A stretch of DNA of 64,000 bases from Perkinsus chesapeaki ATCC PRA-425 (taxonomy: Eukaryota > Protista > Perkinsozoa). The stretch lies in assembly GCA_013115145.1 (NCBI GenBank), contig JAAPAO010000102.1, positions 12,670 to 76,669 of the forward strand. Direction: 5' to 3'. The position numbers and the translations under genes are program-made. The notes beneath the pieces were generated by a model, which saw only the letters and a list, made by a program, of their open reading frames with translations, was not told the origin of the DNA and searched no databases. Of this stretch, positions 1 to 7,161 are shown piece after piece; position 1 is the first letter of the stretch; every line of letters starts with the position of its first letter.

Positions 1-428
1 GCTATAAGAGTAGGTGATCAATCTTTTGTGTGTAATACCGCTAACTTCTGTCCCCACTGAGGTAGACTGTACCCTAATTAGGGCAGTTGAAGTAGCCGTC
101 AAACCGGTAATAGGCTGACAATACGGAGCTATCAGAACATGTAGGAAAAAAACTGACCAGACGAACCAAAGTGAGGAGCACAGAGAATCATGCTATTAAG
201 AAAAAGGGTGGCGCAAACTCTCTCTCAGGACACTTTCAACACAATCCAACAATAGCCAACACTAACGATCGTTGTATAAAGCAGTAAGTGCTGCACTTTT
301 CCCATTCCGTAATAGCACCTGCATCGGGCCGTCCCGATGATTTGACGTTAATTGGTCTTTCTGAGGAGGAGAAGGACAGCGATCTCAGCAGTCACTCCTC
401 CCAGAAGCCCCGCAGAGGCAAGGCGTGA
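1..428 (+). CDS. 3' end of an unidentified multi-exon gene (tentative)
   Basis: Last exon reads ...SGRPDDLTLIGLSEEEKDSDLSSHSSQKPRRGKA-stop (TGA 426-428); no family motif seen. Confidence 0.3.
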
Positions 429-493
429 TGTGAAGTAAATGCGAGAACACACATAGAAAGAAACAGAGTCGTCGAAAAGCCTATCTCAGAAGC

Positions 494-2097
494 CTACTTA
501 GACCGAGCCTTCTTTTTCTTGTCATCTTGCTCTGTCGTCTGCTTTGATGATATCCAACCACGCTTGATTGCTAGCTTCAATGCTAGACCAACGAGTATAA
601 ACGCCACGGCAAATAGTTGGAACTGGGTGATATAAATGTTATCTAACCTCTCGTGGCCTCGATACCTCTCTACGAAAAATCTGACAAAGAACCACGGTGA
701 TGTCTGCTCACGCATCCTATCAAATTGCGGAGAACTTCCTTCCGGAGCTAGATTTACTTAGAGCAATTTGGAGACACCGCAAAGAACGCGACGGTCACCT
801 GCAGTAGATACTATCTCCCGAGCAAAGCACACGAGCGCTTCGCAGGAGTGCTAGCACTCGAATGACATTATGCTGCAGCGTTATTTGGTTATATATGTAC
901 GCCACGCACTTCTCCTTTACTCTCGCCTCGTGCGTTCTGTACGGTTTGCTAGTAGTCGTATGTTGACTGCCCGCCACCAACAAGAAAAGGAAAACCAAAT
1001 GTGTCAAAGGTTTAAAATTCACACATCGCATTATATTTGCACCGTTACCGGCCCACTTGTGGTCCAAGGTGTCCACAACCGCGGAAAATATCTCGAATAG
1101 GCAATTTCGTCGACATCCAAAGAGCCAAACTCGAGTCGTTCGCCCCTTCCACGAGAATCAAGAAGCTAACAACTAAGTGTCCCATACACACAGCTGAGGC
1201 ATAGGCTACTTCTAGAAAAGTTACAAAGTACAGCAGTACGGCTATGAACGACGCTGAATTATTTATCCGTTGTGGACGCGTGAGAAATCTTACCTTGTAG
1301 AACCCAAAAGGATGAAAAAATCTGACACTAGTGCCAGCGGAACCGATTCCACTTTCTTCCTTCTGTACCATAAAATCAAGCCACAGCTGCCAGAGGTAAT
1401 CATTTCGTACAACGGCGCTGGATGTACCGCTGAAGGAGATGTTCATGAGCAACTCATTTACGAAACAGACTTACGAGTGTTAGTTGGAGCGAGGCCGTTA
1501 GGAAAGCTCATAGCCCACGGTACATCAGTAGGGTAACCATAACAACCATCACCCGAAATAAAACAACCAACTTTGCCTGATATGGAAATGAAGGATGACG
1601 ACAACAGAAGGACATTACCGATTGCATGGCCGATGAGGAGGAGGGGAGCTAATGTATCCAACATTCGGCCGATTGATTCCCGACAGCAAAGCTTTGTGTA
1701 TCTTGAAGACAGACCTACCATTCGACTTAATTCCACCACCAGAATCACCCCGTGGTCCCGACTATCCCTCCGACTAGTCCACCTTGAAAGGAGTGTCCTG
1801 AATATCGATATCAAACATCTAGATTTCAGCAGGTTCTCACCTGTTGACATATCCCAGAAGGATACGTTACTTGAATCATTCCATGTAAGCATAAAATGAA
1901 AGCGTGAGCCGAGGATACCACCGATCATAGCACACATTAGAAGGACTGTCGAATCAATCTAAAAGAGTAAAAGTCGGCGATCCATGAATTCGTCTATTCT
2001 ACCTTCAATCCTTTCCTCTTTAGTTCCCCATCCCCCAACAGCAATGCTGACATGAACGACAAGGCCATACAGAGACCATAGCCGTACACAGGACGTC
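494..2097 (-). CDS. lgt: Prolipoprotein diacylglyceryl transferase (Lgt)-like membrane protein, intron-containing; 5' exon probably further upstream (to about 2400)
   Basis: Spliced exons give Lgt motifs in the correct order: GRPVYGYGLCMALSF, IGGILGSRFHF, GHSFQGGLVGG, DTLAPLLLIGHAIGKVGCFISGDGCYGYPTDVPWAMSFPNG, VHPAPLYE, RFFVERYRG...ITQFQ. Short GT-AG introns separate them. Confidence 0.85.
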
Positions 2098-2479
2098 CTG
2101 AGGATTATACATGTGGAAAAGATGGTAGTTACGTGGAACGAGAGCACGAAGATATACTTTCCTATTAGTTCAATAGGCAGCTAACAAAATCTGGGACGTC
2201 CCCCAAAAACGAGTTTTTGAATGAAGGTGGAATGACGTAGGAGCTAATACCGGCTGAATGAAACAGCCTGTCTCACACTTGTCGATCGACCCTTGCGCAA
2301 GTTTCGATGGCACCGAAGCGTTTTGCCGTAAACAGAAAATACTGATCGGTATCCCTGCCAATAGAACATGATGTGAGTGGGAATGGGAGGTAGTTCAGAA
2401 ATGGCATTCGGCATTTTCGCCAAGTTTCAGATGTAAACGTTATGATAAACTTTATATAACGTTAAGCATATGAAGCAGC

Positions 2480-4090
2480 ATTTTCTTGAACTTGAGACTT
2501 CTCATCCTCGCAGTTACACTGCTCCACCCATTCTTATCATAAATGGTGTTATGCGCATAACTCGAGTTCAGAGGCAAATCAAGTCCTGATTTTCGAGTAT
2601 TATACTATCCTTAGCCCTGCAGATGTTATAGCAATGGTATTTAATGTCGATTCCAGCCCAACCCTGAGAACTGAACACAGCGCGCCCAAACATCTCCACA
2701 ACTTCTTATCATAGAATCTACAGCATATATTCCGAATCCCGGTGTTGATTCTCAAGTCACGTGGTCAGTTTGTTCTATACATTCCAGTAGTGCGTGTTAG
2801 CAATTGCATTAGATATATAAAAACGTAAATACTCATCACTGAGTGGAAAATCGAAATAATATTTCACTTCATTGCGCCGGGCTGTACAGCCACGAGCATT
2901 AAGCCATTCCAACACTAACGAACCGCGGCAACGCCTGCTAGTTGGTCCCTGTCAGCTCACCGAATATAGTAAAGAGAACAGGCCTTGCAAAGTCCACAAC
3001 AATAGCCATGGTGGAGCCCAGTAAAGCTGTGCAAGGGTAGGATATACTACCACCGAATTCAATCATTCTAACTTCAACTCAATTCAAGAAGATAGGATGA
3101 CATCCAACGCATGGTAATCATACAAAAAACCGCGCGCCACAAATCTCATTCAGGAAGACATGCAGCACTGCAAAGGAGCGAACCAATATCCAGCCTCAAG
3201 TCGATGCCTTCTGGGCGTCGCCGGCTCACTCATCTGCAAAAAGATAATCTGATTCAGCCAACTTTCTCCTGTTTGTACCAGGCCATCCATATCTCCAGCA
3301 GATGCCATCGGCTGAACCGGCTTTCTATACCCTCTCGTTGGCGACGGTCCGGCTATGCTCGCCTGGCAAAACCTTCTAACCCACGGGATCTCACAGCTAT
3401 TCTATTCCCACTACAAAACATTATCAACTCTCAAAACTTCGAACGTTAGAATTTGAAGAATAGTAAATTCACGAAACGGGCCCATCCTAACCAGCACCAC
3501 CCAGCCCGATTCCTTGCTCACCTGCGGAGCCTTCAGCTCCCATTCATTAGTACTTCCGTATCCGTCGCGTTCAAGGGCCTGAGAGTGGCGAGTTACAGGA
3601 AGCCGCCACCCGAACTGCAACCCACATGATTGAGCTCGTCCAACTTGAAGTCATCAAGGGTCCCCTCCGGAACAAGCAACTGCCCCTACAGGCGATCAAC
3701 TAAATGTCACAGTATACCACCAACCTCACTTGTGTAGCGCGAAACTCAGCCAGAAGATCTTTCTCCTCGACCATCATGGTCTGAGCAGTAAAGTTAACCT
3801 GTGTATCAAACTCCGGTCAACTCCCACCTTAGGCGTAGGCAGCCCAAGAGCCTCAAACACCGGCCCCGCTTCCTTTGAATAAACGACTGGCTCTTTCGCA
3901 GAGTTCTTCCGCCACAGACCGCCCCGTACAGTCGGCAGGGCCAGGCAGCTGCCAAAAGATGGGAAGGATGTCAGCAAAATGCAGCTACCGATGGCACGTC
4001 CTCAGTAGAGCTTCGTCCGAGTCTAAGCTCGCCAGACTGTCGGACCTGAAAATTTTCAAAGTGTTATCGCGCTCGTGTGTATCATGTTTC
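2480..4090 (-). CDS. Hypothetical multi-exon protein
   Basis: Exon-like segments bounded by GT/AG (e.g. ALERDGYGSTNEWELKAPQ; LPTVRGGLWRKNSAKEPVVYSKEAG; TMAIVVDFARPVLFTIF); no recognisable family; boundaries approximate. Confidence 0.3.
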
Positions 4091-4233
4091 CATAAAAATC
4101 GCCAAAATCTCCACACACTAGAGGCTGCTCTGATTTAAAAGCCGAGACGCTCTCCACGCCCCTGCAGCGGGAGGCGAAAAGCCTCACATCTACAGCCTCC
4201 AAGAGCTATTCGCAAAGCGCTACCAAAAGATGT

Positions 4234-4687
4234 ATGTTCGAAGATGCAGATATCGGTATCGATTATGGACGAAGCCTTCGGTTTATGTTTACTGTGACGT
4301 TAGGTGGGTTATCGGGTAGAATTGTTGAATGTCTTCTTTGTTACCACCATATCTCTGCTCTAGCTGATCAGGACAGAAATACCTGGCAAAGTGATGATGC
4401 AAGTAGGAGAGCCCTGGACGAGGAGGATATAAAAAAACCAACCGTGGCTCAGGGCTTGACAACTTTGATGGCTGGAAAACGTGGAAACAAGCTCTTTTTC
4501 GACGAACAAAGAAGAATGGCTGGAGCGAGTTCAGTGGTAGAATGGGAGCACTAGACCCGTAATCGAAGAACAGACCGCCCAGCACGCCTTTAAAATGAAT
4601 GACAAGAATAATGACAAAGAATATCAACAAAACAAGAAGCACAAAGAAGGCCTCGTGCGGAAAGTACGAAAGAAAAAGCCACGGTAA
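4234..4687 (+). CDS. Small Lys-rich hypothetical protein
   Basis: MFEDADIGIDYG... start and a K-rich terminal frame ...EYQQNKKHKEGLVRKVRKKKPR-stop; exon joins not resolved. Confidence 0.3.
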
Positions 4688-4729
4688 CAGAACGATGATG
4701 TACATATCTGATTGATAAATGAGACCAAC

Positions 4730-7161
4730 CTACTTCGCCAGATCTTCGTGTAAATCCGTGACCACATGGTTCTTCTGCAACTGCCTCTCAGTCATCAGTT
4801 TTCTCGCTACGTTCCAAACTACATTCTTCAAGAAGGATGGTAAATTAACAAGATAAATGGCAGCCATTCGACCCATATAATGATGGGCTAGAACCTCACA
4901 GAAACTGCGTAACCATACCACCCAGTGTTGGAATATATGTATGTACTCGCCTGCATCAGTTGGCGAATAAAGAGAAAGGCTTGAGGGAATTTAACAACAT
5001 TCTTTTCGACCGTTGCAACTACCAGAATATATTACCCATAACGGAGCCACACATTACTTCTTACAATGTGCTATACTATAGCTATACATAGGTTATATAT
5101 CTTATATAGCCTATATTACTAAATGGGAAGAGAGTATATTGCCAAGGGAGTTTTACAGAAATCAATCGACAAAGATGGCGAGTATCCCAATACTGATCCC
5201 GAGAATTGTCAGACTATGATTTATTGTATCTGCCAGCTTGCTCTTTTCTACCATTTTCTTCTCACTACTACTGTATACACCGAGGATTGTTCACAGCTGC
5301 TTACTTTATAGAGGGCGTAAGCCGTTGAGAATGGCACGTCAAATCCAAGGCCACTAAAGTCTGCAATTACTACTATGGATTCTACTTTACTCGGCAGCAA
5401 CATGTACCTAACCAGTGCATGGCATTTGGGGACAGAAATTGTGTCCAAGTTACCGAGTGATGAACTCGAGGATGAAAACGCTTGTACGAATAGCTCTCTC
5501 TTTGGAGACTCGGGCTTTCACTAAAAGGCTCGGCCGCACCACTAGGCAGGGTCGCAATTGCTTATCGCGGCCACACACATACACAAATCCCTAAACACAA
5601 AAGGGCTGGGCCGAGAATCGAACTCGGGACCTCTCGCACCCAAAGCGAGAATCATACCACTAGACCACACAGCCGATACGAGAACCGTTATATAGAAAGC
5701 TACTCCTTATTATTGTCAAACTAACGTTTAACCAATCCTCACCGCATTCAACTCTCGTAACAAATCCGTATCTCCCACTGGCTGTTTGAAATACTCCAAT
5801 CCTACCAATGACACCACTTCTATCACTACTAGCTCAGTCTCTCACTCCATTCTTGAGTTTCAATCAGTTCCCTCGCCGCCCGATCAACATTAAAGCGGGC
5901 ATGATACAAGTACCTTTCACAGATGCCGATCATGACGGATAAGTCTCATACTAGCAATCGAATTAATCGGGATTCTGCTCAAAAGAGCTGCATTGAACAT
6001 CCTATATACCCGCTACAGTTGAGATGAGGTTCGTCCAACCATATCGCCCGGACGTTCTCAATACTATCATCTCAGCCATGCGTCTCACATAGTGGAGCAA
6101 GCCCCCGACCTCCGGTCGATTAACTAAGTTTATCATTGGATGCTATCACTGCAGGCTGAAAAGCTCTTACCATCACCGCCAGTGGTGGTAACAGATTTTC
6201 CAGTGGTCCATCGGTGGGGTTTGATGGGGCCAAAGCGGGCCAAAATTATTACAATAATAATATATAATATATTTTAATATACCTATAATATTACCCCGCA
6301 AAGAAATAGTTGAGATTCACAACATATACGTCACACCTTTCCGCACGTTTTTACCAGAGTTCCCGTTCGCCCAATAGTTCAGTACCCAACTCACAGCTAT
6401 CATTATGACTAATACGCATTATACTCATAACCTCACGAATCGGACGGCCTACCCAAAGTACTACCGTAAAATCCTGGGCTCCAACTGTCTGGCCAGCGTT
6501 ACTCCTCGTGCAGCCAGCACTCTGTACACTTCTTCGATGGCTTCCAGTTCATGGGGCATGAGATCTACCTGATACCCATCATGGAGGGGTGAGGATCCAA
6601 TTATGGAATCTATGGTCATCGAAAGAGAAACAAATCCATTTACGATGATAATAGTTTCATTTATATCCACTGAAGCTCAATTGCTGGACATCCAAACCAG
6701 CTGAGGGATTTCCGGAGTAACTTGTCCCCTTCAGTTGGCTGCTTACCACCATCAGTTGACAACTTTCTTGCTTTAAGTGCCAACTTGGCACTTGCAGCAA
6801 GTGAAAGCAAGTGTTTCACACTTTCCTAGAATAACTCGAATTCTGCCCTCATCAGTTATGCGTAGTACAGACTACCAGCCATGATGGATCCAAGCACTTG
6901 CAGGGTTTAGAGTTTGTATGGTTCAGCTATACAAACCCGAAACCCCACATTGCTGCCATTCGCCACGCACTACTACATTGAGGAATATTCTCCTTTCATA
7001 ATCCCCATTAGTAAACCTCGAGAACATGTCCGCATCTTCCAGCTCTCGCAGGAGCACTTCCGGTGGCAGTGTGTAGTCCCCTATGGCGGAGTCCACCGCA
7101 ATGCTCATACAGCAAACACAATCACTGTCCCCCCAACCTCATTATTAAGAACTCCAGCCAT
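4730..7161 (-). CDS. CRAL-TRIO / Sec14-like lipid-binding protein (3' end not resolved)
   Basis: Spliced: LEPRILR|YLYHARFNVDRAARELIETQEWR (CRAL-TRIO N), LRELNA|GFVYVCGRDKQLRPCLVVRP, VESIVVIADFSGLG, HYMGRMAAIYLVNLPSFLKNVVWNVARKLM. Confidence 0.85.
5603..5674 (-). tRNA. tRNA-Pro(TGG), sense, inside CRAL-TRIO intron 5591-5742
   Basis: GGCTGTGTGGTCTAGTGGTATGATTCTCGCTTTGGGTGCGAGAGGTCCCGAGTTCGATTCTCGGCCCAGCCC, 72 nt cloverleaf with one acceptor-stem mismatch, followed by TTTTGTGTTTAG (terminator plus 3' splice site). Confidence 0.95.

What the first reader, a model, noticed from the sequence alone, without database searches (positions are those of the whole stretch)
494..2097. Bacterial lipoprotein-maturation enzyme Lgt encoded as an intron-rich eukaryotic gene
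Seen: full Lgt motif series with introns, so not contamination. Deviations: GHSFQGG at the position of E. coli H103 (SFHGG) and GKVGCF in place of the GR-x-G signature Arg. Established: Lgt transfers diacylglyceryl from phosphatidylglycerol to lipobox Cys and is regarded as a bacterial enzyme; the GC(F/Q)xxGDG-x-YG variant occurs in several bacterial groups. Inference: horizontal or endosymbiotic transfer. It could lipidate organellar or secreted proteins (for example in a cryptic plastid) or have a new activity.
Basis: partly seen in the sequence, partly recalled or inferred. Interest (0 to 1): 0.75.

Follow-up and report, generated by a model that had tools for sequence, protein, structure and literature searches.

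The report
Eukaryotic ER-type Lgt gene in Perkinsus
A clam parasite, Perkinsus chesapeaki, carries an intact, intron-split nuclear gene for a relative of the bacterial enzyme that fastens lipids onto proteins. The gene belongs to an old family shared with dinoflagellates that looks adapted to work in the endoplasmic reticulum, and databases already list it, although no study of it was found.

Summary
The window's minus strand encodes an intact Lgt-family protein of 272 aa. It has no targeting peptide.

The window is Perkinsus chesapeaki contig JAAPAO010000102.1. The gene is copy 1 of four intact tandem paralogues. NCBI merges it into a 1023-aa CRAL_TRIO+LGT model. The scan had already noted this array from an overlapping window (s1-241970).

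The gene is not unique to Perkinsus. Homologues occur in Amoebophrya, Symbiodiniaceae, Crypthecodinium and uncultured perkinsid-like alveolates. Together they form one clade (support 100/99) nested inside a bacterial 'GC-x3-GDGCYG' Lgt subfamily.

Features specific to this clade:
- **Catalytic pocket:** Lys replaces E. coli Arg143 in 98% of members, against Arg in 99% of bacterial relatives. His103 is lost, and two new His residues appear.
- **C-terminus:** 72 of 89 members end in a di-lysine KKXX/KXKXX motif. This copy ends in ARSK and does not.

R143K and H103Q each inactivate E. coli Lgt, so the chemistry is uncertain. My best reading is an ER-resident, lumen-facing lipid transferase. A plastid role is not supported. 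P. marinus homologues were already annotated, and an EST was listed in 2010. No RNA reads could be laid on this copy.

The parts
494..3009 (-). Whole gene from ATG to stop. It is Lgt-family paralogue copy 1 of a four-copy tandem array, with 8 exons, a CDS of 819 nt and a 272-aa product.
   Evidence: Splice model; tblastn with P0001; the window equals JAAPAO010000102.1 positions 12670-76669.
2961..3009 (-). Exon 1 (49 nt). It holds the start codon and the N-terminal beta-strand segment MAIVVDFARPVLFTIF(G). There is no signal or transit peptide.
   Evidence: the same 49-nt exon occurs in copies 2-4.
2098..2960 (-). Intron 1, 863 nt, GT-AG. It is unusually long for this gene.
2003..2097 (-). Exon 2 (95 nt). 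It encodes TM1, including Tyr23 (E. coli Tyr26), and the cytosolic KRKGLK loop.
1841..1958 (-). Exon 3 (118 nt). It encodes TM2 and the lumenal arm with sequons N75-D-S and N79-V-S.
1749..1797 (-). Exon 4 (49 nt). It holds the motif GHSFQGGL. Gln92 (1786-1784) sits at the position of E. coli His103.
1619..1701 (-). Exon 5 (83 nt). It encodes TM4, including the clade-specific His129 (1628-1626).
1475..1576 (-). Exon 6 (102 nt). It holds the signature G-K133-V-G-C136-F-I-S-G-D141-G-C143-Y-G and the short head domain. Lys133 (1574-1572) replaces E. coli Arg143.
   Evidence: NCBIfam NF000777 and NF000778 hit this exon alone.
1294..1429 (-). Exon 7 (136 nt). It encodes VHPAPLYE, TM5, the cytosolic RRKK loop and TM6.
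681..1293 (-). Intron 7, 613 nt, GT-AG.
494..680 (-). Exon 8 (187 nt including the TAG stop). It encodes Arg211 (split codon), Glu215 and Arg218 (E. coli R239, E243, R246), His220, TM7 and a Lys-rich cytosolic tail ending ARSK.

Best explanation
Window 494-3009 (minus strand) is an intact 8-exon nuclear gene of Perkinsus chesapeaki. It is the first of four tandem paralogues and encodes a 272-aa, seven-helix membrane enzyme of the Lgt family (phosphatidylglycerol:prolipoprotein diacylglyceryl transferase). It belongs to a clade that holds every identified eukaryotic homologue and no identified bacterial one: Perkinsus, uncultured perkinsid-like alveolates, Amoebophrya and core dinoflagellates. 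This clade arose once from a bacterial 'GC-x3-GDGCYG' Lgt subfamily. Afterwards it gained spliceosomal introns, a remodelled catalytic pocket (Lys for Arg143, loss of His103, new His129 and His220), and in most members a C-terminal di-lysine ER-retrieval signal. Shown here: gene structure, family and fold membership, monophyly and bacterial ancestry, purifying selection, and the clade-specific residues and C-terminal motif. Inferred: the enzyme sits in the ER or early secretory membrane, with the N-terminus and active site in the lumen and the C-tail in the cytosol. There it would transfer a diacylglyceryl group from a phospholipid to a cysteine thiol of secretory precursors with lipobox-like leaders. 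That would be the first step of a bacterial-type lipoprotein pathway transplanted into the eukaryotic secretory system.
For: Gene and family: the splice model has all GT-AG introns and no internal stop. PF01790 hits single exon pieces and gives 141-158 bits on paralogues. The AlphaFold model of paralogue P0001 (84% identical) has pLDDT 92.6 and 7 TM helices. Its only significant PDB match is E. coli Lgt 5AZB (E 1e-10, TM 0.74). Function retained: dN/dS between copy 1 and copy 3 is 0.21 overall and 0.11 over exons 3-7. Tyr26, Arg239, Glu243 and Arg246 equivalents are conserved. Clade: all named eukaryotic sequences fall in one clade, with support 99 (FastTree, 224 rows), 99 (IQ-TREE quick) and 100/99 (IQ-TREE careful with LG+C20 PMSF). 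Rooted on E. coli Lgt, that clade nests among bacterial sequences. Eukaryotic context: the nearest unnamed members lie among TRAPP, LSM, CUE, reticulon and ankyrin genes. The neighbouring LAMMER kinase hits Perkinsus marinus first and then only alveolates. ER signal: 72 of 89 clade members carry KKXX/KXKXX, against 9 of 56 on the bacterial side. Lys is at position -3 in 90% and at -4 in 67%, and shuffled tails give 16.6 motifs with a maximum of 28. Lgt topology puts the C-terminus in the cytoplasm and the active site on the far side of the membrane (PMC4728403). Transcription of relatives: a P. marinus EST (PMC2868825) and Crypthecodinium and other MMETSP or EukProt transcripts. Leads not tested here: earlier scan notes report an LspA-like gene and several secreted families with lipobox-like leaders in this genome.
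Against: In E. coli Lgt the substitutions R143A/E/K and H103A/N/Q/R/Y all abolish complementation (PMC4728403). The Perkinsus protein has exactly K and Q at those sites. Perkinsus proteins score below the NCBIfam equivalog cut-off (TIGR00544: 84-100 bits against 118.9). To my knowledge the bacterial sister subfamily is itself biochemically uncharacterised. This particular copy ends in ARSK and lacks the canonical di-lysine motif, as do the other three P. chesapeaki copies. A lipobox scan of the window found nothing above chance. LspA and the candidate substrates were not verified here. From general knowledge, phosphatidylglycerol is a minor ER lipid.
Confidence: 0.55

Rival explanations
1. A neofunctionalised Lgt-fold enzyme. 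The clade keeps the 7-TM scaffold and lipid-binding cavity, but it uses a different lipid donor or acceptor, or acts as a lipid hydrolase or remodelling enzyme. On this reading it does not lipidate lipobox cysteines.
For: Lys at R143 is found in 98% of the clade, against Arg in 99% of bacterial relatives. His103 is lost, and His129 and His220 are new clade-specific residues. R143K and H103Q are null in E. coli. The head domain is shorter than in E. coli. Scores fall below the equivalog cut-offs. [quoted passage not shown]
Against: The R239-E243-R246 network, Tyr26, and the GG and GDG motifs are all kept. The bacterial sister group already lacks His103 and Asn146, and one of its members passes TIGR00544 (P0011, 122.8 bits). 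Earlier notes report lipobox-like leaders and an LspA-like gene in the same genome (untested here).
Confidence: 0.3
2. Organellar lipoprotein maturation. The enzyme would be imported into the cryptic plastid or the mitochondrion, where phosphatidylglycerol is abundant, and would lipidate organellar proteins. This would be a relic of endosymbiotic gene transfer.
For: From general knowledge, phosphatidylglycerol is enriched in organelle membranes. Perkinsus has a relict plastid. Some dinoflagellate and Amoebophrya homologues have N-terminal extensions.
Against: The Perkinsus proteins start directly at the conserved Lgt N-terminus with no presequence. The di-lysine motif present in 72 of 89 members is an ER-retrieval signal. 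The nearest bacteria are Calditrichota, Poribacteria, KSB1, Actinomycetota and similar groups. No cyanobacteria or alphaproteobacteria are among the 80 best genome hits.
Confidence: 0.07
3. A non-functional relic, a redundant decaying duplicate, or an assembly or annotation artefact.
For: The gene is one of four tandem copies. It has two unusually long introns. NCBI does not call it as a separate gene. It lacks the canonical KKXX motif. There are no RNA data for this copy.
Against: It has an intact ORF with canonical splice sites. dN/dS is 0.11-0.21. All catalytic-pocket residues typical of the clade are present. The exon structure is identical in all four copies.
Confidence: 0.05

Closest known systems
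E. coli Lgt (phosphatidylglycerol:prolipoprotein diacylglyceryl transferase; PDB 5AZB/5AZC; TIGR00544; PF01790)
   Same: Same Pfam family and the same 7-TM fold (TM 0.74). Tyr26, the GG of the HGGL motif, Gly154, Arg239, Glu243 and Arg246 are conserved. The predicted topology is the same, with N-terminus out and C-terminus in.
   Different: About 25% identity. Arg143 becomes Lys, His103 becomes Gln, Asn146 becomes Cys and Glu151 becomes Asp. The head domain is shorter. It is a nuclear gene with 7 introns, and its eukaryotic clade carries a C-terminal di-lysine motif. It scores below the TIGR00544 cut-off.
Bacterial 'G-R-x-G-C-x3-G-D-G-C-Y-G' Lgt subfamily (Calditrichota, Poribacteria, KSB1, Actinomycetota, Thermodesulfobacteriota, Kangiellaceae; best NCBIfam model NF000778)
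   Same: 31-38% identity, similar length (about 250-270 aa), and the same GC...GDGCYG...PWAMSFP...VHPTPLYE motifs. This is the group within which the eukaryotic clade nests.
   Different: The bacterial members keep Arg143 (134 of 137) and mostly have Tyr at the His103 position. They lack His129 and His220 and show no positional Lys enrichment at -3 and -4. Their own function has not been tested, as far as I know.
Perkinsus marinus 'Prolipoprotein diacylglyceryl transferase, putative' (P0003, P0008) and P. chesapeaki FOL47_000229 / FOL47_000228 (P0001, P0006)
   Same: These are orthologues and paralogues of the window gene, at 84% identity to P0001. They share the 8-exon structure and the CRAL_TRIO-LgtA-LgtB synteny.
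   Different: The window copy is not called as a separate gene. It lies inside a merged 1023-aa model. The P. marinus and P. olseni proteins end in canonical KKTN, KKAD, KKKG or KKDD, whereas the P. chesapeaki copies do not.
Second, divergent Lgt paralogue of Mycobacterium smegmatis
   Same: It is a precedent for an Lgt-family member with substitutions at conserved residues and uncertain activity (PMC12462473).
   Different: It is bacterial, and it was neither compared by sequence nor placed in the tree. This is an analogy only.

Membership tests
Lgt family (Pfam PF01790) | A profile HMM match above the gathering score of 24.9 bits. | tested here: met
The exon piece window:1461-1700:- scores 25.0 bits. 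Paralogues P0001, P0003, P0006 and P0008 score 141-158 bits over the whole profile.
Lgt equivalog (NCBIfam TIGR00544 / NF000778) | A score above the curated equivalog cut-off (118.9 and 334 bits respectively). | tested here: not met
   Perkinsus proteins score 84-100 bits on TIGR00544 and 110-118 bits on NF000778. Bacterial relative P0011 passes TIGR00544 with 122.8 bits.
Lgt family | A seven-transmembrane fold with a small extracytoplasmic head domain. | tested here: met
   The AF2 model of P0001 has pLDDT 92.6 and helices at 22-44, 51-74, 91-109, 114-139, 170-188, 198-217 and 230-250. Foldseek finds 5AZB at E 1e-10 and TM 0.74, with no other hit below E 0.2.
Canonical Lgt (E. coli type) | The signature motif G142-R143-L-G-N146-...-E151-...-G154, in which Arg143 binds the lipid donor. 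| tested here: not met
   The window protein has G-K133-V-G-C136-F-I-S-G-D141-G-C-Y-G. R143K is inactive in E. coli (PMC4728403).
Canonical Lgt (E. coli type) | His103 of the HGGL motif. | tested here: not met
   The window protein has Gln92 followed by G-G-L. H103Q fails to complement in E. coli. The bacterial sister subfamily also lacks His here, with Tyr in 103 of 137 sequences.
Lgt family | The Arg239-Glu243-Arg246 hydrogen-bond network and Tyr26. | tested here: met
   Arg211, Glu215, Arg218 and Tyr23 are present in the window protein. All four are kept in at least 8 of the 9 Perkinsus sequences, and the Arg-Glu-Arg network is kept in every other clade member (Tyr26 is Phe in some).
Lgt family | Catalysis of diacylglyceryl transfer from phosphatidylglycerol to a lipobox cysteine. 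| not testable with these tools
   This needs an enzyme assay, complementation or mass spectrometry.
Bacterial-type lipoprotein pathway | The partner enzyme LspA and lipobox-bearing substrates in the same genome. | not tested
   Only earlier unchecked scan notes bear on this (s1-225840, s1-221137, s1-221136). A lipobox scan of this window gave 2 hits against 1.8 expected.
Di-lysine (KKXX/KXKXX) ER-resident membrane proteins | Lys at -3 and at -4 or -5 of a cytosolic C-terminus. | tested here: inconclusive
   The motif is present in 72 of 89 clade members. It is not met by this copy (ARSK) or by the other three P. chesapeaki copies (ANSK, KVSK, KYAP). The cytosolic placement of the tail is inferred from Lgt topology and the positive-inside pattern.

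The most novel reading that the evidence does not exclude
Dinozoan alveolates (perkinsids, Syndiniales and dinoflagellates) run a bacterial-type lipoprotein pathway inside their ER. In it, an Lgt-derived enzyme with a Lys/His-remodelled pocket, followed by an LspA-like peptidase, attaches a thioether-linked diacylglycerol to secreted or surface proteins. That would be a kind of eukaryotic protein lipid anchor not described so far.
Probability: 0.35. Interest if true: 0.85.

Novelty: new variant of a known kind. Interest (0 to 1): 0.6.

Why it matters
Reviews and drug-target papers treat Lgt as a purely bacterial enzyme. [quoted passage not shown] An ancient Lgt clade under purifying selection and carrying an ER-retrieval signal, found in a major protist lineage, would make a concrete question testable: do some eukaryotes make bacterial-style S-diacylglyceryl lipoproteins in their secretory pathway?

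This matters in three ways:
- It bears on the surface biology of shellfish parasites (Perkinsus), of parasites of dinoflagellates (Amoebophrya), and of coral symbionts.
- It offers a natural experiment on the Lgt mechanism. The clade fixed R143K and lost His103, and both changes are lethal in E. coli. It also gained two histidines.
- It flags a merged gene model in the public annotation of P. chesapeaki.

The gene's mere existence is not new. It is already in public databases.

Tried and rejected
1. My first guess for a 5' exon at 2243-2198 was wrong. Homology to the paralogue N-termini placed exon 1 at 3009-2961.

Later tool calls on the window stopped at 5500. One local regex script ran over the whole window file.

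3. The joined spliced protein was never handed to a search, family or fold tool. Exons were searched by reference, and the 84%-identical database paralogue P0001 stood in for the full-length protein. The joined model was used only inside local scripts for alignment, the tree and dN/dS.

4. A lipobox (PS51257-like) scan of the window found 2 hits against 1.8 in shuffles, so it gave no information.

5. find_trnas on 1-5500 found no tRNA in the long introns.

6. The small conserved ORF upstream of LGT in the compact alveolate contigs is not LspA and matches no Pfam family.

7. A real CRAL_TRIO-Lgt fusion is rejected as unlikely. P. marinus has them as separate genes, and each Lgt copy starts with its own conserved Met.

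8. Six literature searches found no paper on eukaryotic Lgt apart from a list entry in PMC2868825.

9. The exhaustive representative search was not run. It is costly, and the word-based profile search had already found the relatives.
Full report
**What is in the sequence.** The finding lies on the minus strand. Three-frame translation and reading of the splice sites gave a model that I fixed by script. It has eight exons: 3009-2961, 2097-2003, 1958-1841, 1797-1749, 1701-1619, 1576-1475, 1429-1294 and 680-494, the last including the TAG stop. All introns are GT-AG, with lengths 863, 44, 43, 47, 42, 45 and 613 nt. The CDS is 819 nt and encodes 272 aa with no internal stop.

I first guessed a 5' exon at 2243-2198, which was wrong. 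The N-termini of database paralogues placed the true first exon at 3009-2961. The same 49-nt first exon is present in the three other copies. The protein begins directly with the conserved Lgt N-terminal strand, so there is no signal or transit peptide.

**Source and annotation.** A locus fetched for the best database hit matches the window at 100% identity over 5268 nt. The window is therefore Perkinsus chesapeaki GCA_013115145.1, contig JAAPAO010000102.1, positions 12670-76669.

On that contig four Lgt genes lie head to tail:
- Copy 1 is the window gene.
- Copy 2 is intact with the same eight exons.
- Copy 3 is FOL47_000229 (P0001), 84% identical to copy 1.
- Copy 4 is FOL47_000228 (P0006), 56% identical to copy 1.

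NCBI does not call the window gene separately. A 1023-aa model carrying CRAL_TRIO and LGT domains spans the upstream Sec14-like gene plus copies 1 and 2. In P. marinus the order CRAL_TRIO, LgtA, LgtB is conserved, and the three are separate genes of 372, 273 and 266 aa. I therefore read the P. chesapeaki model as a merge. This agrees with the earlier scan note s1-241970.

**Family membership.** PF01790 hits the piece window:1461-1700:- at 25.0 bits (gathering score 24.9) and window:1293-1442:- at 15.5 bits. NCBIfam Lgt models hit exon 6 alone. Full-length paralogues give 141-158 bits over the entire Pfam profile.

They fall below the NCBIfam equivalog cut-offs, with TIGR00544 at 84-100 bits against 118.9. 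By NCBI's rules they would therefore be 'family protein', not 'Lgt'.

An AlphaFold model of P0001, built on a 50-sequence alignment, has pLDDT 92.6, pTM 0.86 and seven TM helices. Its only significant PDB match is E. coli Lgt 5AZB, at E 1e-10 and TM 0.74.

**Catalytic residues.** I used E. coli lgt taken from the annotated K-12 record as a ruler.

| E. coli residue | Window residue |
|---|---|
| Tyr26 | Tyr23 |
| His103 | Gln92 |
| Arg143 | Lys133 |
| Asn146 | Cys136 |
| Glu151 | Asp141 |
| Gly154 | Gly145 |
| Arg239 | Arg211 |
| Glu243 | Glu215 |
| Arg246 | Arg218 |

Mao et al. 2016 (PMC4728403) report that R143A/E/K and H103A/N/Q/R/Y all fail to complement in E. coli. By the E. coli yardstick this protein carries two 'lethal' residues.

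**Relatives.** A profile of six Perkinsus proteins (A1) was searched against 5.8 billion proteins. It found two paralogue groups in P. marinus, P. olseni and P. chesapeaki. It also found named eukaryotic homologues:
- Amoebophrya sp. A25 and A120
- Symbiodinium sp. CCMP2592 and S. necroappetens (annotated 'lgt')
- Durusdinium trenchii
- a Crypthecodinium cohnii MMETSP transcript
- a Dinoflagellata sp. EukProt transcript

The best non-Perkinsus hits are unnamed metagenome proteins. Their contigs are compact and intron-poor. They carry eukaryotic neighbours in a conserved order: TRAPP, a small membrane ORF, LGT, PCO_ADO, LSM, ankyrin, a kinase, then CUE, reticulon or RPL35. The neighbouring LAMMER kinase has P. 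marinus as its best named hit (E 2e-90). The hits after that are dinoflagellates, coccidia, Babesia and a ciliate. These contigs are therefore uncultured alveolates, probably related to perkinsids.

A scan of one genome per bacterial and archaeal species found the nearest prokaryotic genes at 28-38% identity. They are in Calditrichota, KSB1, Poribacteria, Cytophagia, Actinomycetota, Thermodesulfobacteriota, Kangiellaceae and Myxococcota.

**Phylogeny.** Three trees agree:
- FastTree on 224 rows puts every sequence of known eukaryotic origin, and no known bacterial one, on one side of a branch with support 99.
- IQ-TREE on a 75-row subset, rooted on E. coli Lgt with LG+C20+F+G4 (PMSF), recovers the clade at 99 SH-aLRT in the quick search.
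- The careful search recovers it at 100 UFBoot / 99 SH-aLRT.

The clade nests within the bacterial 'GC-x3-GDGCYG' subfamily. Its sister is a Calditrichia/Poribacteria/Deferribacteres-KSB1 group, with only 84/90 support. Perkinsus is monophyletic (100/99) with two paralogue groups, each containing all three species. The compact-genome alveolates are its sister (90/82).

The simplest reading is a single ancient bacterium-to-eukaryote transfer before the split of Perkinsozoa and dinoflagellates. It was not an endosymbiotic transfer from a plastid or mitochondrion. Intron positions are identical in paralogue groups A and B, so the introns predate that duplication. No apicomplexan, chromerid or ciliate appeared among the 120 best hits. 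The list was truncated, however, so absence from those groups is not proven.

**Features specific to the eukaryotic clade.** Four alignment columns are at least 90% one residue in the clade and at most 10% that residue on the bacterial side:

| Window residue | E. coli position | Bacterial side |
|---|---|---|
| Phe91 | F102 | Trp |
| His129 | L139 | mostly Tyr |
| Lys133 | R143 | Arg in 99% |
| His220 | P248 | mostly Asn |

The Arg-to-Lys change is therefore a fixed synapomorphy. It is accompanied by a new His one helical turn away on TM4 and another His in the loop over the pocket. This looks like a remodelled site under constraint, not like decay.

The second feature is the C-terminus. 72 of 89 clade members end in KKXX or KXKXX, against 9 of 56 on the bacterial side. 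Lys occupies position -3 in 90% and -4 in 67% of clade members, against 16-33% at neighbouring positions. Shuffling each tail gives 16.6 motifs on average, with a maximum of 28 in 1000 trials.

KKXX on a cytosolic tail is the classical COPI-dependent ER-retrieval signal (established knowledge). Lgt has its C-terminus in the cytoplasm and its active site on the far side of the membrane (PMC4728403). The Perkinsus loops also obey the positive-inside rule (KRKGLK and RRKK loops, Lys-rich tail).

One caveat applies to this window. The four P. chesapeaki copies end in ARSK, KYAP, ANSK and KVSK and so lack the strict motif. P. marinus (KKTN, KKAD) and P. olseni (KKKG, KKDD) have it.

**Is this copy functional?** dN/dS against copy 3 is 0.21 overall (dN 0.105, dS 0.50) and 0.11 across exons 3-7. 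All clade-typical pocket residues are present.

Direct RNA evidence for this copy is missing. Only small 454 metatranscriptome runs share 6-10% of the stretch's words.

Relatives are transcribed. A P. marinus EST is listed as a BlastX hit to prolipoprotein diacylglyceryl transferase (PMC2868825), and dinoflagellate homologues come from transcriptomes.

**How it most likely works.** The shown parts are an intact nuclear gene, the Lgt fold and family, bacterial ancestry, one dinozoan-wide clade, purifying selection, and clade-fixed pocket changes plus a di-lysine tail.

The inferred part is the mechanism. The enzyme would sit in the ER or early secretory membrane with its pocket facing the lumen. 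It would transfer a diacylglyceryl group from a phospholipid to a cysteine of translocated precursors. I give this about 0.55.

The main rival, at about 0.3, is that the remodelled pocket reflects a changed donor or acceptor. Its grounds are that R143K and H103Q kill the E. coli enzyme, that the bacterial sister subfamily is itself untested, and that phosphatidylglycerol is scarce in the ER (the last from my own knowledge). An organellar role (about 0.07) and a dead copy or artefact (about 0.05) are poorly supported.

Earlier scan notes report an LspA-like gene and several secreted families with lipobox-like leaders in this genome. They fit the main reading, but I did not test them. My lipobox scan of this window was uninformative.

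**Novelty.** The gene's existence is not new. P. marinus proteins have long been named 'Prolipoprotein diacylglyceryl transferase, putative', UniRef names the P. chesapeaki paralogues, and Symbiodinium models are called 'lgt'.

In six full-text searches I found no paper that analyses eukaryotic Lgt. [quoted passage not shown] The following points appear undescribed:
- the dinozoan-wide monophyletic clade
- the fixed Lys/His pocket
- the di-lysine tail that points to the ER
- the unannotated status of this particular copy

I therefore rate it a new variant of a known kind, of moderate to high interest. The key functional claim remains untested.

Noticed in passing
window 494-~7100 (minus); L001:1-7507: The NCBI gene model here is a 1023-aa product with CRAL_TRIO and LGT domains. 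It appears to merge three genes: the Sec14-like gene (exon pieces at about 7100-4300), Lgt copy 1 (the window gene) and Lgt copy 2. In P. marinus the same three positions hold separate genes (L090).
   Followed up: partly
L001:2260-14497; L090:6141-15683: P. chesapeaki has three group-A Lgt copies plus one group-B copy in tandem. P. marinus has one of each. The CRAL_TRIO-LgtA-LgtB order is conserved between the species. Whether the adjacent lipid-transfer (Sec14-like) gene is functionally linked is unknown.
   Followed up: partly
L002-L006, L088, L089: Lake and other metagenome contigs come from uncultured alveolates with very compact, intron-poor genomes, in which genes even overlap. They share the microsynteny TRAPP, a 105-108-aa membrane ORF, LGT, PCO_ADO, LSM across deeply diverged members. 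The small ORF has no Pfam family.
   Followed up: partly
P0077, P0079 (early-branching members of the eukaryotic clade): These two proteins end in C-T-V-C and C-N-V-C, which are CaaX-like, instead of the di-lysine motif. Their organism is unknown.
   Followed up: no
window 1734-1726 and 1722-1714 (minus); residues N75-D-S and N79-V-S: Two N-glycosylation sequons lie in the predicted lumenal arm between TM2 and TM3. Group-A orthologues keep at least one sequon (NST, NSS), and group B has none.
   Followed up: no
window 2098-2960 and 681-1293; L001 copies 2-4: Intron positions are fixed, but which introns are long differs between copies. Copy 1 has 863 and 613 nt at introns 1 and 7. Copy 3 has 451, 364 and 328 nt at introns 1, 2 and 7. 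Copy 4 has 258 and 316 nt at introns 4 and 5. The other introns are 41-50 nt. No tRNA was found in the window copy's long introns.
   Followed up: partly
P0072, P0073 (Amoebophrya); P0098, P0118 (Crypthecodinium-like transcripts): The Amoebophrya homologues are 435-457 aa long, with long low-complexity N-terminal extensions. The Crypthecodinium-type transcripts have an Ala-rich hydrophobic N-terminal extension of about 30 aa that looks like a signal peptide. Perkinsus proteins have neither.
   Followed up: no
   Followed up: no
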